Below are positions 1,782-63,830 of a stretch of 64,000 nt of DNA, piece after piece. The translations under genes and the position numbers were made by a program. The stretch's first letter is position 1. Each line of letters starts with the position of its first letter. The stretch is taken from IMG/VR virus record IMGVR_UViG_3300044213_000107, positions 186,001 through 250,000 of that record; one strand, 5' to 3'. The notes under the pieces were generated by a model that was not told the origin of the DNA, made no database searches, and saw only the letters and a list, made by a program, of their open reading frames with translations.

Positions 1782-2528
1782 TTATTCTGTGTCTACAGGA
1801 TATTCTTTTAAATCTAATAAATGGTAATCGAATTTAACAATTTGATTTTCGTAATTGTCGTAATTCTTAATAAGGTTGCCCATATATTTTGCGAATCGTG
1901 TATGATTTGCTTCTTCCAGGTGGCCTTTTCTATCATCCATACAAGGCATAGGATCAGTTGCCGAATTTTCATTATTAGTTATGGTTTCAAATGCAAAATC
2001 AAGCAATAAACCCTTTGTAAAATATTTACGAGCAATCGGTCTAGCCATTTCAACATTAGGTAAAAATATAAATTTAATATGTGGATATTGTGCAGGTAGC
2101 TCCATAATATACTTTACCATTAACTCATATTCAAACATTTTTTGATCAAATTCATAAAGATACTTATAGTACAATTTATATGCTAAATTGTATTCATCAT
2201 AATCATAATCCATAGTATCGGCGCGACCTTCCTGGAATGCCCTGTGTACTGCATTATGTTCGGGGTTGCCATGAAAAAATCTCTCTAGCCATGTAAAAGT
2301 AAATATAGCAAAATTATCATCAAATTCATCAAATTTATCTACATCACACTGAAATCCTAATATAGCGGCATATTGATTTGATCCCCCGAGCCCGGAACTA
2401 ATGCATTCTGGCGGACCATTAAATCCGAGTTCTTTTAATAACTTTGACCCCCACACTATTCCTTCATGGTCGTCACCATGTTCCAAATCTACATAACTAT
2501 CACCAAAATAACCTATACGAAATGTCAT
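1782..2528 (-). CDS. hypothetical protein, SGNH/GDSL-like N-terminus
   Basis: GYFGDSY and GLGGSNQY motifs, C-terminal GHL. Confidence 0.55.
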   Translation of the reverse strand: MTFRIGYFGDSYVDLEHGDDHEGIVWGSKLLKELGFNGPPECISSGLGGSNQYAAILGFQCDVDKFDEFDDNFAIFTFTWLERFFHGNPEHNAVHRAFQEGRADTMDYDYDEYNLAYKLYYKYLYEFDQKMFEYELMVKYIMELPAQYPHIKFIFLPNVEMARPIARKYFTKGLLLDFAFETITNNENSATDPMPCMDDRKGHLEEANHTRFAKYMGNLIKNYDNYENQIVKFDYHLLDLKEYPVDTE

Positions 2529-2548
2529 TAACGTTTGCCTTTAAAAAA

Positions 2549-2797
2549 ATGTTAGACACACAAAATCTACTTTACAACCGTGGACCACAATGATCAAGTT
2601 AATTACTTTTGCATCCAACCATAACAAGTTATAGCCATGTTCATGGAATCTCATACTCTCTGCGATGTTGATATCTATACTGCCCTCGGAAGCATCCGAT
2701 ATTATGCAAGGGGCTTAAATGTTTTACTGTATCGCTACAGCTATCATAGAGAGCACTACCACTGGTATTAGATGGTTGCCAAACCTGTGTCTAACAT
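2549..2797 (-). ncRNA. candidate structured RNA, about 250 nt, family unknown
   Basis: 12-bp terminal inverted repeat ATGTTAGACACA (2549-2560 / 2786-2797); inner helices CUGUA-GCGA-UACAG, UCGGA-UGCU-UCCGA, UGCUCUCU/AGAGAGUA; no convincing ORF. Strand inferred from the GNRA loop and an upstream TATAAT. Confidence 0.6.
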
Positions 2798-2856
2798 ATA
2801 AATTATATAGCAAATAAAATAAAACACAAGATATATTTTACCAAATAAATAATTAT

Positions 2857-3495
2857 ATGGAACTTTCAATTGAAAAAATAAGACACGCGGCTTTCAAACT
2901 TCATCTTGACACCGGATTTGATTTTAACGATATCCAAACTGCATTAGATTCTGAAGATTGGATTCCTTACAGCCAAACTGGGCTAAGTAGAGGGCACGTT
3001 GCTTATGCGACTCGGTTTAAGAAAAATCGTCCCGAAAGTGAAGTACTAAGAAGCATACTCACATTTTTAAGATCAGATGATATAAAGCGTAAGTACATAG
3101 AAACTTTCTATGCAACACATGACCCATACTTTGAAAGTATTTGGTGCATGAAACCCGACGAAATGATGAGTTTTGTTGACATTGGCGCCGACCTAGTACT
3201 AGATCGACCAGGATTCGAAATTGATATTCATGTCGATAATAGAATGTTAGTTAGTACTGGATGGATATACCTAACCCCTAGAGATGATCCAGAATGGAGT
3301 ACTTACTTTTATTTTGATAGGGAAAAGACCAGTGACCCAATACGCATGACAACCAATCCCGGCGACGGATGGTTAAATTTTAATGATTTTAATACCTGGC
3401 ACGATGGATATAACCGAACAGAAGAAAATAGATATGGTATTATTTTATCGCTTTCAATTAAGCATCCACGAGAATATAACTACAGACACAAATAA
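2857..3495 (+). CDS. putative 2OG-Fe(II) oxygenase-fold protein
   Basis: HxD (IHVD) ... WH ... R arrangement; paralogous pattern to 14889-15467. Confidence 0.55.
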   Translation: MELSIEKIRHAAFKLHLDTGFDFNDIQTALDSEDWIPYSQTGLSRGHVAYATRFKKNRPESEVLRSILTFLRSDDIKRKYIETFYATHDPYFESIWCMKPDEMMSFVDIGADLVLDRPGFEIDIHVDNRMLVSTGWIYLTPRDDPEWSTYFYFDREKTSDPIRMTTNPGDGWLNFNDFNTWHDGYNRTEENRYGIILSLSIKHPREYNYRHK

Positions 3496-5266: not shown

Positions 5267-5872
5267 TTACATTTCGGGGCCATTTCCATTCTTAAATCCT
5301 ATTTCTCCGCCCTGCTCTTTGATTTTTTTCAAAACATCTTCAAAGAGTATTGGGGCAAAGTCAGGTAGTTGCTCAACTGATACATTATAATAACGAGGAT
5401 CGATTTCGTTACTGTATAGTATTTCTCCTGTCCGAGCATCAACTGCACGAGGCTTCATAACACGATTAGCATGTAAATGCCCATGTATTGAGCAGCCAAA
5501 TCTACCCAAACTTTCAGTGTGTAATGGGATATGACTTAGTATCAAACCGTTCATAACATGGTAGGCACGTAGTTCTCTAAAGTATTGCCTGTACTCATCA
5601 TCACGAAAGATATCGTGATTACCACGGATCAACACTTTGTCGCCATTTAATCTAGCAAGTGTTGGCAAGGCTCGACGGTTGATAACACAGTCGCCCAAGT
5701 GATAGACCTTGTCTGTGGGCTTTACTCTTTCGTTCCATGCTTTTACCATTGCTTCATCCATTTCCGCAGGATCAGTCCATGGACGCAACTTTGTCACACC
5801 GTCGTTGCGAGTAAAACGACATACGCCTGCGTGACCAAAGTGCGTGTCGCTGACTAAAAATACACTTGGCAT
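5267..5872 (-). CDS. calcineurin-like metallophosphoesterase
   Basis: SDTHFGH, HLGD, RGNHD, SHIP, HGHLH motifs. Confidence 0.92.
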   Translation of the reverse strand: MPSVFLVSDTHFGHAGVCRFTRNDGVTKLRPWTDPAEMDEAMVKAWNERVKPTDKVYHLGDCVINRRALPTLARLNGDKVLIRGNHDIFRDDEYRQYFRELRAYHVMNGLILSHIPLHTESLGRFGCSIHGHLHANRVMKPRAVDARTGEILYSNEIDPRYYNVSVEQLPDFAPILFEDVLKKIKEQGGEIGFKNGNGPEM

Positions 5873-13311: not shown

Positions 13312-13387
13312 TGGTGGTCAGAAGAGCACTCGAAGCTCCACATTCATCCTTATGAGGGATGCTCTCTTCCTCTTAAGATATCTGACC
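13312..13387 (-). tRNA. tRNA-CAT (probably elongator Met), atypical D arm
   Basis: CATCC-CTCATAA-GGATG, T arm GGAGC-TTCGAGT-GCTCT, CCA. Confidence 0.85.
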
Positions 13388-13476
13388 ATATAAAAACACA
13401 CTCTTATCAATATCCCAGCGGTCGACTCGGTTTAACAGGGCCCAACGTAGAGGGTCGGGCGAATGTGTTTTTATAT
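13388..13476 (-). ncRNA. candidate structured RNA of about 89 nt filling a tRNA spacer
   Basis: 16-bp closing stem ATATAAAAACACATTC/GAGTGTGTTTTTATAT abutting tRNA ends on both sides; inner CCCGAC/GTTGGG hairpin. Confidence 0.6.
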
Positions 13477-13513
13477 GGTAGGAGCACGGGGATTTGAACC
13501 CTGAACCTATCAA
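13476..13513 (-). pseudogene. tRNA 3'-half remnant fused to the HNH stop codon
   Basis: TTGAT-AGGTT-CAGGG-TTCAAAT-CCCCG-TGCTCCT-A-CCA, with no matching 5' half found. Confidence 0.7.
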
Positions 13514-16714: not shown

Positions 16715-16952
16715 CTCTATATGTAAACATACCTAAGGAACTCTTGAACAATATGGACTCTGCCGGCACCACGGGTTCGTCTCCCGATTGGGTTCATTCG
16801 TTATTACAGCCTACATGATCTGTCAGTACACTCGTACAGTATCTTGCGATCCGTAACTACCTTCATGTGCACTGCATACTCCGCCCCGGCGAGCTGTCCC
16901 CTTTGCAAGCACCTAACAGTATAGGTAACCTTTTGTACGTTTACATATAGAG
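16715..16952 (-). ncRNA. candidate structured RNA (238 nt) heading the tRNA transcript
   Basis: 18-bp closing stem CTCTATATGTAAACGTAC/GTATGTTTACATATAGAG; inner GCCGG/CCGGC, GGAC/GTCC, ACATGA/TCATGT, CGGG/CCCG helices. Confidence 0.65.
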
Positions 16953-16985
16953 GCTATTGTTTACAATAGCTTATATGTGATTAAC

Positions 16986-18220: not shown

Positions 18221-19402
18221 TTATACTGGGAATACTTCCCTAAAATTTGTTTTTCTTATACGATCTAACATACCAATATATTCGTTAAATGTATTGATTA
18301 AGTTAGGATTGTGCACAGCATTTTCCAATGAGTTTATTGTAAATTTAATCGCTGATATATAGTTATATCGCAGATAATGCGTTAAAGGAATCTGAGATTT
18401 TAGTTCTTGCAAATCGAGAATAAATTGATTTCTTTGTGCATCTGTTAACACTTCTATGTCTAAATATGGTTTAGACATTAATCTACCAACATTCACAGCA
18501 TATGAGTTATCAACACAATATTGAATTAATGGTATCAACGCCCAGAAACTTGTATACTGTAGTGTATGGCCAATGGTAATAGGATTATTAGGCCATGTAG
18601 GATTAGGACGTGTGGCTAATTTTTTAATATTAGCATCTACGGTTGCCCACTCACTACCATATCTAACATATTCTGTATGTTGCTCGGTACCTTCTAAACT
18701 TACAACTATTGCAACAGATTTAAATTTTGAAATACAATCGTATACTTCATCTGTTAATGTTGTACCGTTTGTGGTAACTGTTAAATTTAATTGCTCCGGA
18801 TGCGGAATGCTTTTTAACATTGCAATAGCATTAGGAGTTATAAGTGGCTCGCCACCTGTTAAAAAAATATGTTCAACATTTTCTAATAGTCGAGGCTCCA
18901 GCTCTTGATATTCATCTGTTTCAAACCAATTTCTTTTTTGTATAAATTGATCATCATGAGTTAAGTGAACAAAATTTTTATATTGTTCTCTATTCATTTT
19001 TACTTCAGTTTCTATACTAGAACTGCAATAAGGATTACACATTATACATTTTAAATTACAGTGATTGCCAAATTCAACATGTAAATGTTTTATGCCATAA
19101 GATTTATCTGGTGAAAAATCTTGTCTAATAAAATTTTCAAATGTGCGATTACCATTTATTCTGTACGACGATGATCCATTGTCTTCTTCGTCCCAACAAC
19201 GACTACAACCTTCATGTCTTTGGCCATTGTCTAGTTCTTGACTAATTTTAATAACTTTTGTTTGTCGCCAACGATCAAATTGATCATATTTATCAACCAA
19301 ATTACCATCTTTTATTTGATAATTACAACAAGGTGTAAGTGTGCCGTCTGTGCGAATATTAACACCAATATGCGAATGTATACAAAATGTTTCTTGATTC
19401 AT
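18221..19402 (-). CDS. radical SAM protein with SPASM/twitch-type cluster
   Basis: CNLKCIMC, TGGEP, LTPCC...CSRC; start likely ATG 19402 (TATAAATA-N5-ATG); track gives 19423. Confidence 0.9.
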   Translation of the reverse strand: MNQETFCIHSHIGVNIRTDGTLTPCCNYQIKDGNLVDKYDQFDRWRQTKVIKISQELDNGQRHEGCSRCWDEEDNGSSSYRINGNRTFENFIRQDFSPDKSYGIKHLHVEFGNHCNLKCIMCNPYCSSSIETEVKMNREQYKNFVHLTHDDQFIQKRNWFETDEYQELEPRLLENVEHIFLTGGEPLITPNAIAMLKSIPHPEQLNLTVTTNGTTLTDEVYDCISKFKSVAIVVSLEGTEQHTEYVRYGSEWATVDANIKKLATRPNPTWPNNPITIGHTLQYTSFWALIPLIQYCVDNSYAVNVGRLMSKPYLDIEVLTDAQRNQFILDLQELKSQIPLTHYLRYNYISAIKFTINSLENAVHNPNLINTFNEYIGMLDRIRKTNFREVFPV

Positions 19403-19432
19403 AGTGATATTTATATGCAACATATATTGTAA

Positions 19433-19674
19433 TATTCTAAAACTGATTAGTTTCGGGAGATGTCCGTCCTATACAACCGGCCCTTTCAATGAGCCTGTAA
19501 AATATTCTTCTACTCAGTTTTAGAATACCCTTTATTGCTAGAGGATATGATAGGGTCAATACCCTACCCAGGAGTCTTACTAATCGGTTTCCGCCCGACG
19601 TTCATGTATCCTGTCCGCCCGTTTGTGCTAGTTAAAGTGAGCACGGGACCTCGTTTCCCTTGAGCACTCGATTC
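19433..19674 (-). ncRNA. candidate structured RNA of about 240 nt
   Basis: 14-bp helix TATTCTAAAACTGA (19433-19446 / 19514-19527), TAGGGT-ATTG-ACCCTA, CCCGT/ACGGG; GC-rich non-coding island. Confidence 0.55.
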
Positions 19675-56729: not shown

Positions 56730-59700
56730 TTAAACTGGTACGTACTCTCTAAATAAGCGTACACTATTTGTTGCATTTACCGCAGTAAATTGTAATAATG
56801 TATTACCACCGCTTACTGTTGCAGTAACTACACCCAAGTTGCCTCCGGTTTGTACGATGCCATATGATGTAACATATGCAGATCCACCACCTTGTACAAC
56901 CAACACTTCTTGTGATTGATAGTTTCCACCGTTAGTAACCTGTACAATGTACTTGGCAGTACGATATGAAGTATTACTAAATGTGTCTAGTGTAGTAGCA
57001 GTACCAGCACTGGCTACGCTTACGTTGGCTTCTTGTGTTACTAAACCACCACTTGTTGGCATTGTAAAGCGTGCTGTTGCTGCACCAGAACCGCTATTAA
57101 ACTGTAGACCTGCTATATCATCTGGTGTAATATTTACATTACCAGTTGTACTTGCTAATCCACTAATAGTTGTAGTTGTAGTCAACATTCTAACGTCAAT
57201 GACATCACCGGCAGCAGGAGCTTCAGTAAATGTCAATGTTGTATTAGAAACGCTGTAAGCTAGTGTTGGGATTTGAACCACACCGTTAATACTTACAATA
57301 GTACCAGCAGTTGTTGCAGACTGGCTTAATGTAAATGTAGTTGTTGATCCGTCGCCGTTAAACTGCTGATCTGCAATAATTGTAAACGTTTGTGCGCTTG
57401 CTTGCCATATACTTCCTGTGTAAACTTCAAACTGGTTAGTTGTGCTGTTATAACGGAACATACCTTGTGTAGCAGTTCCATATCCACCTGAACCAGGACG
57501 TTGAGCAGTAGTACCAACTGGTAGTAAAATAGAATCAGTTGTATTGAATACTACTTTAGCACCAGGAACTAAAGTACTTGCGGTTGCACTGTTACCAAAA
57601 ATAACACTGTCGTAAGTACTGCTTGGTCTTGCCCAAACCAAAGTTTGGTCATTTACACCACGGATGATTGTATCAAAGTTAGCGTTATTAGTGTTGTTAA
57701 ACACTGCTCCGCCATTATGATATGTATTGCCACTTATACCAACTCCACCAATAACAACCAACGCACCAGTTGTAGCATTTGTGCTTGCGGTGCCTGCGGC
57801 TGCAACAATGTTACCATTGTGGATTGCAAAGCCTGTTGTTGTGATATTTGCAGTACTAGCAATATAACCACCGTTAATAACTGCATTAGCACTATAGAAG
57901 TTAGTTGCAGTCAAGTTAGTTACTGTACCAGTTGTGATCGTTGCATTTGTCAATGCACTGATATAACCACCACTGATTACAACGTTACCAGAACTGAAGT
58001 TTGTAGCAACTGCAGTTGTTAGGTTAGCACTTGTTGAACCAAATGTTGCGATATTACCTGTAGCAGCACTTAGACCACTTAGGTTAGTTGCAGTACCACC
58101 TGTGATAACTGCATTAGCTGTACTAAAGTTTGTTGCTTGTAGTGTTGTAACTGCAGCAGTTGTGATCGTTGCATTTGTCAATGCACTGATATAACCACCA
58201 CTGATTACTGCATTACCAGTACTGAAGTTTGTAACACTGCCGGTTGTGGCATATACATTGGCCAAACCACTTGCATAACCACCTGTAATCGCAGCATTTG
58301 CAGTACTAAAGTTAGTTGCCACTGCAGTTGTCAAGTTAGCACTTGTACTGTTCAATGAAGTAACATAACCAGTTGCTGCTGCAATATTAGTCAAGTTATT
58401 AATATAACCGCCAGTGATAACTGCATTACCAGAACTTAGATTTGTTGCTTGAGCAGTTGTAGCATATACATTAGCCAAACCACTTGCATAACCACCAGTT
58501 ACTGCAATGTTACCAGAACTGAAGTTAGTTGCTTGAGCAGTTGTTGCAGTTAGGTTTGTTAAGCCAGTTGCTGAACCACCAGTTACTGCAATGTTACCAG
58601 AACTGAAGTTAGTTGCTTGAGCAGTTGTTGCAGTTAGGTTTGTTAAGCCAGTTGCTGAACCACCAGTTACTGCAATGTTACCAGAACTGAAGTTAGTTGC
58701 TTGAGCAGTTGTTGCAGTTAGGTTTGTTAAGCCAGTTGCTGAACCACCTGTTATTTGTGCATTACCAGTACTGAAGTTGGTTGCTTGAGCAGTTGTAGCA
58801 TATACATTGGCCAAACCACTTGCATAACCACCTGTCACTGCAATATTACCAGAACTGAAGTTAGTAGCAACTGCAGTTGTTAGGTTAGCACTTGTAGATC
58901 CAAATGTTGCAATGTTACCAGTAGCAGCACTTAGACCACTTAGACCAGTAATTGAACCACCTGTTACATATGCATTACCTGTGCTGAAGTTAGTAGCAAC
59001 TGCAGTTGTTAGGTTAGCACTTGTTGAACCAAATGTTGCAATATTACCTGTTGCGGCACTCAATCCACTCAAGTTGGTAGCAGTACCGCCAGTAATTACT
59101 GCGTTAGCAGTTGATAGGTTTGTTGCTTGTATGGTTGTTACAGTTTCGTTGGTAATTGTTGCAGTTGTGATTGTTGCATTTGTTAACGCACTAATATAAC
59201 CACCACTGATAACAACGTTTGGTGAACTAAAGTTAGCTGCATACAATGTTGTTACATTACCAGTAGTACTATTCATTGAAGCAACATAACCAGTTGCTGC
59301 AGTAATATTTGCCAAGTTATTGATATAACCACCAGTTACTACTGCATTAGCAGTATTGATACTACCTGTGTAGAGAGTAGTAATATTACCAGCAGTTGCA
59401 CCAAATGTTGCAATATTACCTGTTGCCGCACTCAATCCACTCAAGTTGGTAGCAGTACCACCTGTGATAACTGCGTTAGCAGTTGATAGGTTTGTTGCTT
59501 GTAGTGTTGTAACTGCAGCAGTTGTGATCGTTGCATTTGTCAATGCGCTGATATAACCACCACTGATTACTGCATTACCGGTACTAAAGTTAGTTGCTTG
59601 AGCAGTTGTAGCATATACATTAGCCAAACCACTTGCATAACCACCTGTTACTGCAACATTTGGTGAGCTAAAGTTTGTTGCATATAATGTAGTAAATGTA

Positions 59701-62700
59701 CCAGTTGTGATCGTTGCATTTGTCAATGCGCTGATATAACCACCACTGATTACTGCATTACCGGTACTAAAGTTAGTTGCTTGAGCAGTTGTAGCATATA
59801 CATTAGCCAAACCACTTGCATAACCACCTGTAATTGCTGCGTTAGCAGTTGATAGGTTTGTTGCTTGTAGTGTTGTAACTGCAGCAGTTGTGATTGTTGC
59901 ATTTGTCAATGCACTGATATAACCACCACTGATTACTGCATTGGCAGTGTTAATACTACCAGCATACAATGTTGTGATGTTGCCATTTGTACTACCAAAT
60001 GTTGCAATGTTACCTGTAGCAGCACTCAATCCACTCAAGTTGGTAGCAGTTCCGCCTGTGATAACTGCATTACCAGTACTAAAGTTAGTTGCTTGTAATG
60101 TTGTTAAGCCATTAGCAGAACCACCAGTAATAACTGCATTAGCAGTACTAAATCCAGTGGTAGCAACTAGATATGTAAATGCACCGGTACTTGGACTTGT
60201 ATTACCAATTGGTGTGTTGTTTAAACTAGATACAGCGATACCGCCACCTAAAGTTAACGAACCACCAATAAACAAGTTACCGGAGATACTTTCGTCGCCC
60301 CAGATCTGCACCGCACCAGTGTTGGCACTTAGACCGCCGCCCAATACACGAGCATTAGCAACTGTTAATGAACCCATTTCAACAGGGTCATAGATTGCGT
60401 TTGTGTAGTTTGTTACACCTGCTGAGGGTTCTGGAACATTACTAAAGAATTTCCAAGTATTTGTAACATAATCACGTGTCAATCCAGTATGTTGATATGT
60501 TCCGCTAGAACCACCAACAAAGTGTGAATAGAAACCAACATCATAATTGTAGTTACTTGGGTTACTTGCATTCAAATATAACAATGGATCGTTAACAGAT
60601 TCAATTGTTGTTACTTGTGAAGTTAAGTTACCGTAAATGTTACCGCCAACCCATAGGTTGCCTAAAATACTTGCACCGCCAGTTAACTGTACTGCACCAG
60701 TGTTTAAACCAGTTGAGTCTGTGGCATTAGTAAATGTTGTTAAACCATTTGATGTTAGTGTTGTAAATGCGCCAGTTGCAGCAGTATTTGCACCAATTGG
60801 ATGGTTATCTGAATATCCGCCCGTAATACGTGCATTACCTGTGCTGAAGTTAGTTGCTTGAGCAGTTGTAGCATATACGTTGGCTAAACCACTTGCATAG
60901 CCACCAGTAATAGCAACGTTAGGCGAACTAAAGTTAGCTGCGTATAATGTTGTAAAGTTACCATTTGTAACTGTAGCAGTTGTGATCGTTGCATTTGTCA
61001 ATGCACTGATATAACCACCACTGATTACTGCATTACCGGTACTAAAGTTAGTTGCAACCGCAGTTGTCAAGTTAGCACTTGTAGATCCAAATGTTGCAAT
61101 GTTACCTGTAGCGGCACTTAGACCACTTAGGTTAGTTGCAGTACCACCTGTGATAACTGCATTGGCTGTACTGAAGTTAGTTGCTTGAGCAGTTGTTGCA
61201 GTTAGGTTTGTTAAGCCAGTTGCTGAACCACCAGTTACCTGTGCATTACCTGTACTGAAGTTAGTTGCTTGAGCAGTTGTTGCAGTTAGATTTGTTAAAC
61301 CAGTTGCTGAACCACCAGTTACCTGTGCATTGCCTGTACTGAAGTTTGTTGCTTGAGCAGTTGTTGCAGTTAGGTTTGTTAAACCAGTTGCTGAACCACC
61401 TGTTATTTGTGCATTACCAGAACTGAAGTTAGTTGCTTGTAGTGTTGTGACTGCAGCAGTTGTTACTGTAGCAGTTGTGATTGTTGCATTTGTCAATGCG
61501 CTGATGTAACCACCACTAATTACTGCATTGCCAGTACTGAAGTTAGTTGCTTGAGCAGTTGTTGCAGTTAGATTTGTTAAACTAGTTGCTGAACCACCTG
61601 TTATTTGTGCATTGCCTGTACTGAAGTTCGTTGCAACAGCGGTTGTCAAATTAGCACTTGTTGAACCAAATGTTGCAATATTACCTGTTGCAGCACTCAA
61701 GCCACTCAAGTTAGTAGCAGTACCACCTGTGATAACTGCGTTAGCAGTACCAAATCCTGTTGTTGCAACTAATGTACCAATGTTTCCGTTTGTACTGTTT
61801 AACTGAGCAAAAGTACCTACACCAGCAGCAACGTTGGCTAGATTATTAGCATAGCCGCCAGTTAAAACAACATTACCAGAACTTAAATTTGTTGCTTGAG
61901 CAGTTGTTGCAGTTAGGTTTGTTAAACCAGTTGCCGAACCACCAGTTACCTGTACATTACCAGAACTGAAGTTAGTAGCAACTGCAGTTGTCAAGTTGGC
62001 ACTTGTAGATCCAAATGTTGCAATGTTACCTGTAGCGGCACTCAAGCCACTCAAGCCAGTAATTGAACCACCTGTTACGTATGCATTACCAGTACTGAAG
62101 TTAGTTGCAACAGCGGTTGTCAAATTAGCACTTGTTGAACCAAATGTTGCAATGTTACCAGTTGCAGCACTTAGACCGCTTAGGTTAGTAGCAGTACCAC
62201 CTGTAATAACTGCATTAGCAGTACTGAAGTTTGTTGCTTGTAATGTTGTAACAGCACCAGTTGTGATTGTTGCATTTGTCAATGCGCTGATATAACCACC
62301 ACTAATTACTGCATTGCCAGTACTGAAGTTAGTTGCTTGAGCAGTTGTTGCAGTTAGATTTGTTAAACCAGTTGCTGAACCACCAGTTACCTGTGCATTG
62401 CCTGTACTGAAGTTTGTTGCTTGAGCAGTTGTTGCAGTTAGGTTTGTTAAACCAGTTGCTGAACCACCTGTTATTTGTGCATTACCAGAACTGAAGTTAG
62501 TTGCTTGAGCAGTTGTAGCATATACGTTAGCCAAACCACTTGCATAACCACCTGTAATTGCAGCATTTGCAGTACTGAAGTTTGTTGCTTGAGCAGTTGT
62601 TGCAGTTAGGTTTGTTAAACCAGTTGCTGAACCACCTGTTATTTGTGCATTACCAGTACTGAAGTTTGTTGCGACTGCAGTTGTCAAATTAGCACTTGTT

Positions 62701-63830
62701 GAACCAAATGTTGCAATGTTACCTGTAGCGGCACTTAGACCGCTTAAGCCAGTAGCAGTACCGCCAGTAATTACTGCGTTAGCTGTACTGAAGTTTGTTG
62801 CTTGTAGTGTTGTAACTGCAGCAGTTGTGATTGTTGCATTTGTCAATGCACTGATGTAACCACCACTGATAACCGCGTTAGCAGTATTCATACTACCTGC
62901 GTACAACGTTGTTACATTACCGGCAGTAGCACCAAATGTTGCGATATTACCAGTTGCAGCACTTAGACCGCTTAAGCCAGTAGCAGTACCGCCAGTAATT
63001 ACTGCATTAGCGGTATTCATACTACCTGCATATAATGTTGTTACATTACCTGCGGTTGCGCTAAATGTTGCAATGTTACCGGTTACGGCACTCAATCCAC
63101 TCAAGTTAGTTGCTGTACCACCTGTGATAACTGCGTTAGCAGTTGATAGGTTTGTGGCCTGAAGAGTTGTTATTGCACCAGTTGTGATCGTTGCATTTGT
63201 CAATGCACTGATATAACCACCGCTGATTACTGCATTGGCAGTATTTAAACTTGATGAGAACAATGGACCTGTAACATTAGCACCGCTGGAATTTAACTGA
63301 GTTATATATCCTGTTGCGGCTGCTAGTGTGGTGAAAGTACCTGCAGCGGGAGTAACATTACCAATAACGGTATTGTTAATTGCGCTTGCAGACACGGAAA
63401 CTGCGGTTAAATTACCAAGTTTTACGTTAGCAAATCCAGAGTTGTTAATACTTGTTACACCTGAGCCAGTGTCAGTAGTTACAACGGCTTCGAACGCTCC
63501 GTCGGCTTCTACCCACACCCACGCGGTGTTTACACTACCGTATCCACTAAGCGAACTTAGATTACGGTTTACTAAAATACCAATATCGTATCCTGTTAAC
63601 GATCCTGAATACCCGTTGTTAAAAACAACTAATGGGTCATTAACATATGTGTTTGTTGAACTTACTGTGCTGGATGAACCTGATACGCTAAGGTTACCAA
63701 CAATAGTAACGTTAGAATTTAACGTTAAATTTGGGTTAAATAATGCACCTGTCAACGTTCCGGATGCGATTTTCGCATACGTTATCGTTGCATCAGTGAT
63801 CTGATTATTTTTAATTCTTGTTACTGCCAC
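56730..63830 (-). CDS. giant repetitive tail fibre / adhesin-like virion protein (2366 aa)
   Basis: GTG start with AGGAG SD and TAAATA; dozens of TxATNFSTxNAxITGG modules. Confidence 0.85.
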   Translation of the reverse strand: MAVTRIKNNQITDATITYAKIASGTLTGALFNPNLTLNSNVTIVGNLSVSGSSSTVSSTNTYVNDPLVVFNNGYSGSLTGYDIGILVNRNLSSLSGYGSVNTAWVWVEADGAFEAVVTTDTGSGVTSINNSGFANVKLGNLTAVSVSASAINNTVIGNVTPAAGTFTTLAAATGYITQLNSSGANVTGPLFSSSLNTANAVISGGYISALTNATITTGAITTLQATNLSTANAVITGGTATNLSGLSAVTGNIATFSATAGNVTTLYAGSMNTANAVITGGTATGLSGLSAATGNIATFGATAGNVTTLYAGSMNTANAVISGGYISALTNATITTAAVTTLQATNFSTANAVITGGTATGLSGLSAATGNIATFGSTSANLTTAVATNFSTGNAQITGGSATGLTNLTATTAQATNFSTANAAITGGYASGLANVYATTAQATNFSSGNAQITGGSATGLTNLTATTAQATNFSTGNAQVTGGSATGLTNLTATTAQATNFSTGNAVISGGYISALTNATITTGAVTTLQATNFSTANAVITGGTATNLSGLSAATGNIATFGSTSANLTTAVATNFSTGNAYVTGGSITGLSGLSAATGNIATFGSTSANLTTAVATNFSSGNVQVTGGSATGLTNLTATTAQATNLSSGNVVLTGGYANNLANVAAGVGTFAQLNSTNGNIGTLVATTGFGTANAVITGGTATNLSGLSAATGNIATFGSTSANLTTAVATNFSTGNAQITGGSATSLTNLTATTAQATNFSTGNAVISGGYISALTNATITTATVTTAAVTTLQATNFSSGNAQITGGSATGLTNLTATTAQATNFSTGNAQVTGGSATGLTNLTATTAQATNFSTGNAQVTGGSATGLTNLTATTAQATNFSTANAVITGGTATNLSGLSAATGNIATFGSTSANLTTAVATNFSTGNAVISGGYISALTNATITTATVTNGNFTTLYAANFSSPNVAITGGYASGLANVYATTAQATNFSTGNARITGGYSDNHPIGANTAATGAFTTLTSNGLTTFTNATDSTGLNTGAVQLTGGASILGNLWVGGNIYGNLTSQVTTIESVNDPLLYLNASNPSNYNYDVGFYSHFVGGSSGTYQHTGLTRDYVTNTWKFFSNVPEPSAGVTNYTNAIYDPVEMGSLTVANARVLGGGLSANTGAVQIWGDESISGNLFIGGSLTLGGGIAVSSLNNTPIGNTSPSTGAFTYLVATTGFSTANAVITGGSANGLTTLQATNFSTGNAVITGGTATNLSGLSAATGNIATFGSTNGNITTLYAGSINTANAVISGGYISALTNATITTAAVTTLQATNLSTANAAITGGYASGLANVYATTAQATNFSTGNAVISGGYISALTNATITTGTFTTLYATNFSSPNVAVTGGYASGLANVYATTAQATNFSTGNAVISGGYISALTNATITTAAVTTLQATNLSTANAVITGGTATNLSGLSAATGNIATFGATAGNITTLYTGSINTANAVVTGGYINNLANITAATGYVASMNSTTGNVTTLYAANFSSPNVVISGGYISALTNATITTATITNETVTTIQATNLSTANAVITGGTATNLSGLSAATGNIATFGSTSANLTTAVATNFSTGNAYVTGGSITGLSGLSAATGNIATFGSTSANLTTAVATNFSSGNIAVTGGYASGLANVYATTAQATNFSTGNAQITGGSATGLTNLTATTAQATNFSSGNIAVTGGSATGLTNLTATTAQATNFSSGNIAVTGGSATGLTNLTATTAQATNFSSGNIAVTGGYASGLANVYATTAQATNLSSGNAVITGGYINNLTNIAAATGYVTSLNSTSANLTTAVATNFSTANAAITGGYASGLANVYATTGSVTNFSTGNAVISGGYISALTNATITTAAVTTLQATNFSTANAVITGGTATNLSGLSAATGNIATFGSTSANLTTAVATNFSSGNVVISGGYISALTNATITTGTVTNLTATNFYSANAVINGGYIASTANITTTGFAIHNGNIVAAAGTASTNATTGALVVIGGVGISGNTYHNGGAVFNNTNNANFDTIIRGVNDQTLVWARPSSTYDSVIFGNSATASTLVPGAKVVFNTTDSILLPVGTTAQRPGSGGYGTATQGMFRYNSTTNQFEVYTGSIWQASAQTFTIIADQQFNGDGSTTTFTLSQSATTAGTIVSINGVVQIPTLAYSVSNTTLTFTEAPAAGDVIDVRMLTTTTTISGLASTTGNVNITPDDIAGLQFNSGSGAATARFTMPTSGGLVTQEANVSVASAGTATTLDTFSNTSYRTAKYIVQVTNGGNYQSQEVLVVQGGGSAYVTSYGIVQTGGNLGVVTATVSGGNTLLQFTAVNATNSVRLFREYVPV
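58521..58740. repeat. near-identical 84-bp tandem repeat inside the fibre gene
   Basis: Unit GAAGTTAGTTGCTTGAGCAG...GTTACCAGAACT begins at 58521, 58605 and 58689 (28-aa module). Confidence 0.9.

What the first reader, a model, noticed from the sequence alone, without database searches (positions are those of the whole stretch)
2549..2797. Stand-alone structured RNA of about 250 nt between accessory genes
Seen: a 12-bp terminal inverted repeat encloses a multibranch fold (UACCA/UGGUA, CUGUA-GCGA-UACAG, UCGGA/UCCGA inside GCCC/GGGC, UGCUCUCU/AGAGAGUA, GCUAUAAC/GUUAUGGU). A TATAAT lies just upstream on the minus strand and there is no start-to-stop ORF of note. The closed-stem architecture matches the RNAs in the tRNA array, but it is 7 kb away. 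Function unknown.
Basis: partly seen in the sequence, partly recalled or inferred. Interest (0 to 1): 0.6.

Follow-up and report, generated by a model that had tools for sequence, protein, structure and literature searches.

The report
New structured RNA in jumbo-phage tRNA arrays
The flagged 250-base stretch is a real, previously uncatalogued, elaborately folded non-coding RNA gene of a lineage of lake-water jumbo phages, usually embedded among the phage's tRNA genes; what it does is still unknown.

Summary
Window 2549-2797, read on the minus strand, is one member of a conserved structured-RNA family. I found 21 distinct homologs (about 240-310 nt), all in uncultivated phage contigs, many of them over 100 kb, and in freshwater metagenome contigs. 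A covariance-model alignment pairs 99.3% of 564 cells; 64 cells carry compensatory double changes against 16.5 in shuffles (0/500), and slid registers pair only 25-44%.

The fold is a 12-16 bp closing stem P1, a small hairpin P1a, a P2-P3 stalk with an invariant A-rich internal loop, a P4 domain, and variable 3' hairpins. The P4 domain holds an optional P5 and an invariant hairpin (UCGGR-N4-YCCGA) stacked on a covarying helix with a one-sided bulge.

- **Strand:** minus. The core helices hold 6 G.U pairs and no A.C; 20 of 21 members fold better in sense.
- **Known families:** no Rfam family matches at E<=10. ARAGORN finds no tRNA or tmRNA. No reading frame is conserved.
- **Context in relatives:** the RNA lies inside tRNA arrays, sometimes 5-17 nt from a tRNA on both sides. 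It is therefore most likely a stable trans-acting RNA cut out of tRNA precursors.
- **Context in the window:** it has been separated from the array and carries its own TATAAT and a U-tract.

The molecular function is unknown. The closest analogues are GOLLD, ROOL and the T4 species 1/2 RNAs.

The parts
2549..2797 (-). RNA gene: the whole structured RNA, about 249 nt from the first to the last base of closing stem P1. RNA position i corresponds to window coordinate 2798-i.
   Evidence: The covariance-model hit covers window 2540-2801 on the minus strand at 216.5 bits, E 9e-50. The family alignment A8 has 21 sequences. The minus strand folds with z -2.9 against -1.6 for the plus strand.
2786..2797 (-). 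P1 5' strand (AUGUUAGACACA). It pairs with 2549-2560.
   Evidence: Perfect 12-bp inverted repeat. In the 10 modelled P1 pairs, 8 have compensatory double changes and 99% of cells are paired.
2549..2560 (-). P1 3' strand (UGUGUCUAACAU).
2774..2785 (-). P1a: small hairpin GGU(U)-UGGC-(A)ACC with a conserved loop of the form N-U-G-G-C-R.
   Evidence: A local hairpin is present in nearly all members, with different stems: AGC/GCU, GGU/ACC, UGGC/GCCA, GGG/CCC, GUC/GAC, AGCAG/CUGCU.
2769..2773 (-). P2 5' strand (AUCUA). It pairs with 2565-2569 (UAGAU).
   Evidence: 100% of cells are paired. The closing pair varies GC:18, AU:2, UA:1.
2759..2766 (-). P3 5' strand (ACC-A-GUGG, with a bulged A). It pairs with 2577-2583 (CCAC-GGU).
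Evidence: Pair 40/348 is CG:8, UA:8, AU:3, UG:1. Pair 44/345 is GC:17, AU:4.
2565..2583 (-). 3' conserved block CCAC-GGUUG-UAAAG-UAGAU. It holds the 3' strands of P3 and P2 and the A-rich internal loop (2570-2576).
   Evidence: ACGGUUGNAAANNAGAUUU is invariant in the first 9 members. It reads AC[A/U]GUCG in a second subgroup, with matching changes in the partners.
2654..2755 (-). P4 domain. Outer helix UGCUCUCU (2748-2755) pairs with AGAGAGUA (2654-2661); inner helix UGAU (2743-2746) pairs with AUCG (2663-2666). The domain encloses P5, P6 and the J6/4 strand.
   Evidence: The outer helix covaries among the window, L003 and L088. The inner helix appears as CAGAC/GUCUG, UAGAU/AUCUA, CAAAC/GUUUG, AUAAC/GUUGU and CAUUCAC/GUGAAUG in other members. 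This was read by hand.
2727..2740 (-). P5 hairpin CUGUA-GCGA-UACAG (optional or variable).
   Evidence: Kept in L003 and L088. Replaced by unrelated hairpins in L120, L147 and L155. Absent in L121 and L091.
2682..2714 (-). P6. Outer helix GCCC (2711-2714) pairs with GGGC (2682-2685). An 11-nt one-sided bulge ending AAUA lies at 2700-2710. The invariant hairpin UCGGA-UGCU-UCCGA lies at 2686-2699.
   Evidence: The inner hairpin is paired in 21 of 21 members, with AU:12 and GC:9 at the loop-closing pair. The outer helix falls into four classes, including GCCC/GGGU with a G.U pair in 12 sequences (five automatic picks corrected by eye).
2667..2681 (-). J6/4, the junction strand. The family consensus is GAUUUUAAAG; the window reads AGUAUAGAUAUCAAC.
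   Evidence: Conserved block in alignments.
2587..2653 (-). 3' domain. It holds the conserved junction (A)AGAUUCCAUGAA (2640-2653), hairpin P8 GGCUAUAAC-UU-GUUAUGGUU (2617-2636) and a variable terminal region (2587-2616).
   Evidence: Hairpins of variable length and sequence occupy this region in all members.
2543..2548 (-). U-tract directly after P1 (7 U counting the last base of P1). It is followed by AAAGG and the ATG of ORF 1782-2528.
   Evidence: Read. U-rich runs follow P1 in the close relatives L003 and L088; the runs are weaker in other members.
2802..2807 (-). -10 hexamer TATAAT, 5-7 nt upstream of P1. A -35-like TTGTGT lies at 2824-2829 with a 16-nt spacer.
   Evidence: Read. L003 has TATAAT, and L088 has TGTACAAT with TTGCAA at -35. 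This site is not listed by the consensus scan, whose first-hexamer threshold it fails.
1782..2528 (-). Downstream neighbour: a 248-aa ORF with FGDSY and GGSN motifs (SGNH/GDSL-hydrolase-like). It is a syntenic neighbour, not part of the RNA.
   Evidence: A homolog lies downstream of the RNA in 7 of 21 loci.
2857..3495 (+). Divergent upstream neighbour: a 212-aa ORF of unknown function. Its presence separates the RNA from upstream transcription in this phage.

Best explanation
Window 2549-2797 (minus strand) is a gene for a stable, intricately folded non-coding RNA. It belongs to a family confined, as far as these searches reach, to one lineage of uncultivated freshwater contractile-tailed jumbo phages.

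Shown: the secondary structure is conserved by compensatory substitutions. Its elements are P1, P1a, P2, P3, P4, an optional P5, P6 with a one-sided bulge, and 3' hairpins. The strand is minus. No protein is encoded. The gene is single-copy. In relatives it sits inside tRNA gene arrays on the tRNA strand.

Inferred: the RNA is transcribed with, or like, the tRNAs. It is released from the precursor by the host enzymes that trim the neighbouring tRNAs: RNase P at the 5' end of the downstream tRNA, and 3'-end processing of the upstream tRNA. The 12-16 bp closing stem then protects both ends from exonucleases, so the RNA accumulates as a stable species during infection.

Inferred for this window: an inserted, oppositely oriented gene pair has cut the RNA off from upstream transcription. 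It has acquired its own sigma-70-type promoter (TATAAT 2802-2807) and a U-tract after P1.

Most speculative: the many invariant junction and loop nucleotides, the A-rich internal loop and a possible loop-to-loop contact point to a defined tertiary fold. That fold would act in trans, either as the RNA part of a ribonucleoprotein or as an RNA-only machine linked to tRNA or translation takeover. The phage RNAs GOLLD and ROOL, which also lie near tRNA arrays, are the comparison.
For: Homologs. 21 distinct sequences were found through neighbour proteins and degenerate DNA patterns and confirmed with a covariance model at E 1e-24 to 2e-52.

Covariation. 99.3% of 564 cells are paired against 89.3% in shuffles. 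13 pairs and 64 cells show double changes against 7.7 and 16.5 in shuffles (0/500). Slid registers pair 25-44%. P1a and the outer P6 helix also covary.

Strand. The core helices hold 6 G.U and 0 A.C. A G.U pair in outer P6 occurs in 12 members. Sense is more stable than antisense in 20 of 21 members, by 9.5 kcal/mol on average. The orientation matches adjacent tRNA genes.

tRNA embedding.
- L287: tRNA-Ser, 6 nt, RNA, 10 nt, tRNA-Thr.
- L305: Ser, 5 nt, RNA, 12 nt, Thr.
- L252: Val, 17 nt, RNA, 10 nt, Thr.
- L296, L120, L130, L003: a tRNA starts 0-12 nt after the RNA.
Spacers this short leave no room for a separate promoter or terminator.

Not coding. No frame is open across the family.

Not a known RNA. 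Rfam gives nothing at E<=10 for the window or for 5 homolog loci. ARAGORN finds no tRNA or tmRNA there.

Promoter. TATAAT or TACAAT is conserved in the three members that follow a divergent gene.
Against: There are no expression data. Transcription, the ends of the RNA and its stability are all inferred.

All homologs come from one related phage lineage with shared synteny (Metallophos, then RNA, then tRNAs, then the SGNH-like ORF). The repeated tRNA adjacency is therefore partly inherited rather than independently evolved.

In the window itself, the layout promoter, RNA, U7, Shine-Dalgarno, ATG would equally fit a cis-acting leader of the 248-aa ORF.

No protein partner or target is identifiable. 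Neighbours are unrelated auxiliary genes (DctP, redoxin, radical SAM, SGNH-like).

Seventy-nine loci from phages carrying a homolog of the Metallophos gene lack the RNA, so it is dispensable for the lineage.
Confidence: 0.7

Rival explanations
1. It is a cis-acting leader (riboswitch-, T-box- or attenuator-like). The RNA folds co-transcriptionally. Formation of P1 next to the U-tract terminates transcription, so a ligand or tRNA that stabilises or destabilises the fold controls expression of whatever lies downstream: the 248-aa ORF here, tRNAs elsewhere.
For: In the window the order is TATAAT, RNA, a run of 7 U directly after P1, AAAGG, then ATG at 2528. U-rich runs follow P1 in L003 and L088. 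An alternative pairing of the P1a region (CARCY) with the invariant GGUUG is 96% paired in 10 sequences and changes in step in one subgroup. That could reflect a conformational switch. The many invariant junction bases resemble an aptamer.
Against: The downstream genes are heterogeneous: tRNA-Thr, Leu, Pro, Met, a DctP solute-binding protein and an SGNH-like ORF. In L287, L305 and L252 the RNA lies between two tRNAs with 5-17 nt spacers, and the U-tract is reduced to CUUAUU. A closing stem that spans 230 nt is a poor intrinsic terminator. The alternative pairing competes with P1a and with lower P3, both of which have stronger covariation. No Rfam riboswitch or T-box model matches.
Confidence: 0.12
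2. It is a processing or spacer element. The long P1-P2-P3 stalk would be an RNase III-type processing site, like the stems that flank rRNAs or the T7 early-RNA hairpins. Its job would be only to punctuate the polycistronic tRNA and gene transcript, and the interior would have no function of its own.
For: The window has several other long closed stems next to tRNAs or ORFs on the same strand: 13385-13480, 16715-16955 and 19433-19530, with z-scores of -3.7 to -7.1. P1 extends to about 16 bp in many members.
Against: The interior carries the strongest sequence conservation: the invariant UCGGR-N4-YCCGA hairpin, GAUUUUAAAG and AGAUUCCAUGAA. It also has covarying helices. A mere spacer would not need these. 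The other closed-stem elements are not homologous.
Confidence: 0.06
3. It is a diverged member of a known housekeeping RNA class that phages sometimes carry near tRNAs and that current models cannot recognise: tmRNA, RNase P RNA, 6S, SRP RNA or a Y RNA.
For: The position in tRNA arrays, the 5'/3' closing stem and the 240-310 nt size are typical of such stable RNAs. A long-range contact between the P1a loop and the internal loop is possible.
Against: There is no Rfam hit at E<=10 in six members under permissive filters. ARAGORN finds no tmRNA. By inspection the family lacks a tRNA-like acceptor/T-arm and a CCA end. It also lacks the RNase P P4 signature (GGAAAGUCC / ACAGAA) and the rod with central bubble of 6S (alignments; the family signatures are from my own knowledge).
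Confidence: 0.05
4. It is not an RNA gene but a DNA-level element (a MITE-like insertion with terminal inverted repeats, a recombination or replication site) or the remnant of a decayed protein gene.
For: A 12-bp terminal inverted repeat around 225 bp is the shape of a MITE. The element is present in only some phages that carry a homolog of the neighbouring Metallophos gene, as an insertion would be. Its G+C content (about 0.40) is gene-like in an AT-rich spacer.
Against: It is single-copy in the window and in every locus examined. The terminal repeats differ in sequence between homologs but stay complementary, as do eight internal helices. G.U pairs occur with no A.C pairs, which indicates selection on one RNA strand. 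No reading frame is conserved, and indels are not multiples of three.
Confidence: 0.02

Closest known systems
GOLLD and ROOL RNAs (Rfam families; large ornate RNAs of phages and prophages)
   Same: They are encoded by phages, often next to or within tRNA islands. They are multi-helix RNAs supported by covariation and have no known protein partner or function (literature read). The genomic niche is the same, and the maturation route alongside tRNAs is probably the same too.
   Different: GOLLD and ROOL are two to three times larger (many GOLLD members exceed 800 nt). Their sequences and architectures are unrelated to this RNA. Their Rfam models give no hit here at E<=10. Nothing here shows oligomerisation.
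Phage T4 stable RNAs species 1 and 2 (rnaC/rnaD) in the T4 tRNA gene cluster (own knowledge, not tested)
   Same: They are small stable RNAs of unknown function, encoded within a phage tRNA cluster. They are co-transcribed and processed with the tRNAs, and their 5' and 3' ends are paired.
   Different: The T4 RNAs are about 120-140 nt and simpler. The INPHARED phage collection gave no DNA match to the element.
Phage-encoded tmRNA
   Same: A stable RNA of a few hundred nucleotides found in phage tRNA regions, with its ends joined in a stem.
   Different: This RNA has no tRNA-like domain, no tag reading frame and no CCA end. ARAGORN and the Rfam tmRNA models are negative.
Riboswitch or T-box leaders
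   Same: Size, a P1-closed multi-helix fold, invariant junction nucleotides and, in the window, a U-tract and a gene directly downstream.
   Different: There is no constant downstream gene. The RNA can lie between two tRNAs. No known aptamer or T-box signature matches.

Membership tests
Any Rfam 15 family (including RNase P, tmRNA, 6S, SRP, GOLLD, ROOL, group I/II introns, riboswitches, T-box, YrlA) | A match to the family covariance model at or near its gathering score. | tested here: not met
   There is no match overlapping the element at gathering thresholds. There is none at E<=10 in window 2300-3100. There is none at E<=10 over five homolog loci.
tRNA / tmRNA | A cloverleaf, or a tRNA-like domain with a tag peptide reading frame, detectable by ARAGORN. 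| tested here: not met
   ARAGORN finds 25 tRNAs in the window and many in the related loci, but nothing at the element.
Bacterial RNase P RNA | The P4 pseudoknot with the conserved GGAAAGUCC and ACAGAA strands, and the L15 GGU (signatures from my own knowledge). | tested here: not met
   These strings are absent from the conserved blocks of alignments A5 and A8. The Rfam RNase P models are silent. Catalysis was not testable.
Phage tRNA-array-associated structured ncRNA (functional category, not a homology family) | Encoded on the tRNA strand, within or at the edge of a phage tRNA array. | tested here: met
   A tRNA lies within 0-110 nt downstream in 10 or more of the 21 loci. Three loci are flanked by tRNAs on both sides with 5-17 nt spacers. 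In the window itself the nearest tRNA is 7 kb away.
Phage tRNA-array-associated structured ncRNA (functional category) | A conserved secondary structure supported by covariation, with no coding potential. | tested here: met
Phage tRNA-array-associated structured ncRNA (functional category) | Accumulates as a discrete stable RNA during infection. | not testable with these tools
Riboswitch / transcription-attenuating leader | A constant position upstream of a functionally coherent set of genes, and an expression platform (a terminator or a sequestered Shine-Dalgarno). | tested here: not met
   The downstream genes are tRNA-Thr, Leu, Pro and Met, DctP and the SGNH-like ORF. A strong U-tract exists only in the window subgroup.
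MITE / transposable element | Multiple copies with conserved terminal inverted repeats and target-site duplications. | tested here: not met
   There is one copy per locus and per window. The terminal-repeat sequence varies but stays complementary.
Retron ncRNA (msr-msd) | An adjacent reverse-transcriptase gene. | tested here: not met
   The ORFs flanking the element in the window and several neighbours in related loci gave no reverse-transcriptase match in Pfam or PHROGs.

The most novel reading that the evidence does not exclude
The RNA is a new class of large functional RNA. It would be a ribozyme or an RNA-only or RNP machine that the phage deploys together with its tRNA set, for example to act on tRNAs, on the translation apparatus or against tRNA-targeting host defences. 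Its compact tertiary fold would be built around the invariant P2/P3 internal loop, the P1a loop contact and the bulged P6 hairpin.
Probability: 0.2. Interest if true: 0.85.

Novelty: new variant of a known kind. Interest (0 to 1): 0.62.

Why it matters
Complex-folded bacterial and phage RNAs above about 200 nt with many invariant junction nucleotides are rare. They have repeatedly turned out to be ribozymes, riboswitches or unusual assemblies; GOLLD and ROOL form RNA-only cages.

This family adds a compact (about 250 nt), well-defined and experimentally tractable example from the same niche, the phage tRNA array. Members sandwiched between two tRNAs give a direct in-vitro test of how such RNAs mature. 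The family could also help explain why large phages carry extra RNAs alongside their tRNA sets. For annotation, it identifies a recurrent 'empty' 250-300 bp gap in freshwater jumbo-phage genomes as an RNA gene.

Tried and rejected
- **Near and distant BLASTN** of the element, and TBLASTN of the 248-aa neighbour, against about 50,700 GenBank phage records gave no match.
- **First exact 14-mer scan of IMG/VR** (AACCGTGGACCACA) gave 83 hits; all but the window's own contig were chance.
- **Two-block pattern scans.** Two genome-contig scans found none, so there is no sign of the RNA in cellular or prophage genomes with these exact patterns. Two further viral scans returned only chance hits or loci already known.
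- **Metallophos neighbour as a handle.** More than 600 IMG/VR loci were reported and 80 fetched. None of the 79 new ones carries the RNA.
- **Other jumbo contigs with the 248-aa homolog** (L151, L153, L092, L251, L254, L255) have no RNA within the fetched flanks.
- **Pseudoknot or alternative helix P2b** (CARCY/GGUUG). It looked supported with 10 sequences. With 21 sequences it competes with P1a and lower P3, which covary more strongly. I keep only a possible 2-bp loop contact (C-R with Y-G), and that rests on a single phylogenetic split.
- **Antisense ORFs of 67-102 aa** overlapping the RNA in 8 loci. Their extents are inconsistent and some run into tRNA genes, so they are spurious.
- **Search for a linked protein partner** by clustering ORFs within 3 kb in all 21 loci found only auxiliary genes.
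An nhmmer profile was used instead and found nothing new.
- **The literature search** found no description of this RNA. The large IMG/VR structured-RNA survey reports candidates of only 29-151 nt.

Full report
**Where the window comes from.** The window is part of IMG/VR contig IMGVR_UViG_3300044213_000107, 260,723 bp long. It carries a contractile-tail gene set, including a 1206-aa tail sheath. It also carries 25-26 tRNA genes on the minus strand and many auxiliary metabolic genes. It is therefore an uncultivated jumbo myovirus.

Many of its relatives come from lake and other freshwater metagenomes. None is in the GenBank phage collection at the sensitivity used.

**Checking the observation.** The finding lies in a 328-nt gap between two divergent ORFs: 1782-2528 (minus, 248 aa) and 2857-3495 (plus, 212 aa).

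By itself the repeat proves little. About two such repeats per 64 kb are expected by chance, and the single-sequence fold is only moderately unusual (z -2.9 on the minus strand, -1.6 on the plus strand). The decisive evidence had to come from relatives.

**Finding relatives.** The two flanking proteins led to syntenic contigs. Aligning the intergenic DNA showed blocks of identity alternating with helices that had changed on both sides.

Degenerate patterns taken from the invariant blocks, together with look-ups of neighbour proteins, then raised the family to 21 distinct sequences of about 240-310 nt. A covariance model built from the first eight scores all of them at E 1e-24 to 2e-52.

There is one copy per locus and one in the window. 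Two pattern scans of 185,579 bacterial and archaeal genomes found none.

**Structure.** On the model-guided alignment of 21 sequences, the four core helices pair in 99.3% of 564 cells, against 89.3% in shuffles. Thirteen of 27 pairs and 64 cells carry changes on both sides, against 7.7 and 16.5 in shuffles; no shuffle out of 500 reached the observed values. Sliding the 3' partners by 1-3 columns drops pairing to 25-44%.

The helices, from the outside in:
- **P1** has 10 modelled pairs. It is 12 bp in the window and up to about 16 bp elsewhere. Eight of the ten pairs covary.
- **P1a** is a 3-5 bp hairpin with loop N-U-G-G-C-R. Its stem takes at least six different sequences.
- **P2** is AUCUG/CAGAU.
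- **P3** is ACC-A-GUGG/CCAC-GGU. Its third pair appears as C-G, U-A, A-U and U.G, and its upper pairs switch GC to AU.

An invariant, A-rich, asymmetric internal loop (YG-N-AAA-R opposite AU) lies between P2 and P3.

Inside the stalk lies the P4 domain. P4 takes at least seven different sequences; this was read by hand. P5 is a hairpin that is unrelated in sequence between subgroups or missing. P6 is an invariant hairpin, UCGGR-N4-YCCGA, stacked directly on an outer helix. That outer helix occurs as GCCC/GGGC, GCCC/GGGU, CGCC/GGCG or CGCU/AGCG. P6 also carries a one-sided 11-21 nt bulge ending in AAUA. In one subgroup this bulge holds an extra mini-hairpin (read).

Conserved junction strands follow (GAUUUUAAAG, GAAAG, AGAUUCCAUGAA), then variable 3' hairpins. 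Window coordinates for every element are in the parts list.

**A candidate extra helix.** An additional pairing, CARCY with GGUUG, looked good with ten sequences. It overlaps P1a and lower P3, which are better supported with 21 sequences. What may survive is a 2-bp contact between the last two P1a loop bases (C-R) and the Y-G that follows P3. It changes A-U to G-C between the two main subgroups, but that is a single evolutionary event.

**Strand and coding.** The core helices contain six G.U pairs and no A.C pair. The outer P6 helix has a G.U pair in 12 sequences (five of the automatic picks were corrected by eye). Sense folds are more stable than antisense in 20 of 21 members, by 9.5 kcal/mol on average. 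The RNA always has the orientation of adjacent tRNA genes. The RNA strand is therefore the window's minus strand.

No frame stays open across the family. In L091 the longest stop-free stretch in any frame is 34 codons. The antisense ORFs called in some loci have inconsistent ends and overlap tRNA genes.

**Genomic context.**
- In L287, L305 and L252 the RNA lies between two tRNA genes (Ser or Val upstream, Thr downstream) with spacers of only 5-17 nt.
- In L296, L120, L130 and L003 a tRNA begins 0-12 nt after the RNA.
- In L273, L276 and L299 tRNA-Ser ends 6-10 nt before it.
- In several others auxiliary genes (DctP, redoxin) have been inserted between the RNA and the same Ser and Thr tRNAs.

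The wider neighbourhood is syntenic: a 201-aa Metallophos phosphoesterase, then the RNA, then tRNAs, then the 248-aa ORF. These are therefore orthologous loci of one phage lineage, not independent associations.

The Metallophos gene is 81-87% identical in the 79 best of more than 600 matching IMG/VR loci. None of those 79 has the RNA, so the RNA is an accessory gene.

The 248-aa ORF carries FGDSY and GGSN motifs typical of SGNH/GDSL hydrolases and sits among sugar-modifying genes. Nothing suggests it is an RNA partner.

**How it most likely works.** Spacers of 5-17 nt to tRNAs on both sides leave no room for a separate promoter or terminator. In those phages the RNA must be part of the tRNA precursor, and its ends must be set by the enzymes that trim the neighbouring tRNAs. 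The closing stem then shields both termini, as in other stable RNAs. This step is inferred, not shown.

In the window, L003 and L088, an oppositely oriented gene lies upstream. A TATAAT or TACAAT sits 5-7 nt before P1, with a TTG-type -35, and a U-run follows P1. This looks like a secondary adaptation to being cut off from the array.

The function of the mature RNA cannot be read from sequence. The density of invariant unpaired nucleotides and A-rich junctions argues for a specific tertiary fold acting in trans. Its niche links it to tRNA or translation biology. I put 0.7 on 'stable trans-acting RNA matured with the tRNAs'.

Much less weight goes to the rivals:
- a cis-acting leader (0.12);
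- a mere processing stalk (0.06);
- an unrecognisable member of a known housekeeping class (0.05);
- a DNA element or decayed gene (0.02).

**Comparison with known RNAs.** No Rfam 15 family matches the window element or five homologs, even at E<=10 with permissive filters. ARAGORN sees no tRNA or tmRNA there. By inspection the RNase P P4 signature, a tRNA-like domain and a 6S-type bubble are all absent.

In niche and character the nearest known RNAs are GOLLD and ROOL. Both are phage or prophage RNAs often near tRNA islands, of unknown function, and now known to form RNA-only cages. From my own knowledge, the T4 species 1 and 2 stable RNAs of the T4 tRNA cluster are also comparable. This family is much smaller than GOLLD and ROOL and is unrelated to them in sequence and fold.

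A large survey of IMG/VR structured RNAs reported only candidates of 29-151 nt. I found no description of this RNA. I therefore rate it a new family within a known kind: structured RNAs associated with phage tRNA arrays.

**Limits.**
- There are no expression data.
- The interior helices P4, P5 and the 3' hairpins rest on hand alignment of variable regions.
- The homolog set comes from exact-pattern scans that miss divergent members.

Noticed in passing
window 16715-16955 (minus strand): A second closed-stem RNA candidate of about 240 nt. It has an 18-bp closing stem, MFE -82.8 kcal/mol and z -3.7. It ends 6 nt before tRNA-Asp (16709-16631). It is not homologous to the 2549-2797 family, and no homolog was found in the fetched loci.
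   Followed up: partly
window 13385-13480 (minus strand): A structure of about 96 nt with a 19-bp perfect AU-rich closing stem (z -7.1). It abuts the 5' end of tRNA-Met (13387-13312). It could be another small RNA or a processing hairpin.
   Followed up: partly
window 19433-19530 (minus strand): A structure of about 98 nt with a 16-bp closing stem (z -4.0), directly upstream of ORF 18221-19423 on the same strand.
   Followed up: partly
window 1782-2528 (minus strand): This 248-aa ORF has no Pfam, PHROG or NCBIfam hit. It does have N-terminal FGDSY and GGSN motifs typical of SGNH/GDSL hydrolases. It has 57 homologs, mostly on large phage contigs next to sugar-modifying genes.
   Followed up: partly
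window 5267-5872 (minus strand): A 201-aa calcineurin-like phosphoesterase. It is 81-87% identical in the 79 best of more than 600 matching IMG/VR loci and is usually found at the edge of tRNA arrays. It marks a very large lineage of uncultivated phages.
   Followed up: partly
window 56730-63830 (minus strand): A 2366-aa ORF made of about 30 diverged tandem repeat units (nhmmer self-hits). This accounts for several of the long inverted repeats in that region.
   Followed up: no
L308:1901-2001 (minus strand): ARAGORN reports a tRNA with a four-base anticodon (tacc) inside a tRNA array of a related phage. It could be a frameshift-suppressor-like tRNA or a mis-call.
   Followed up: no
L287:7049-7141; also L297, L298 and L299: The tRNA-Ser genes directly upstream of the RNA are called with the unusual anticodon ACT in four related phages.
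   Followed up: no
L287:6755-6985 and homologs in 8 loci: A 68-78 aa ORF family; the one member scanned (L287, 76 aa) matches RNA polymerase Rpb6/omega (Pfam PF01192). It recurs near the tRNA arrays. eIF-1A/IF1-like ORFs recur in related contigs.
   Followed up: no
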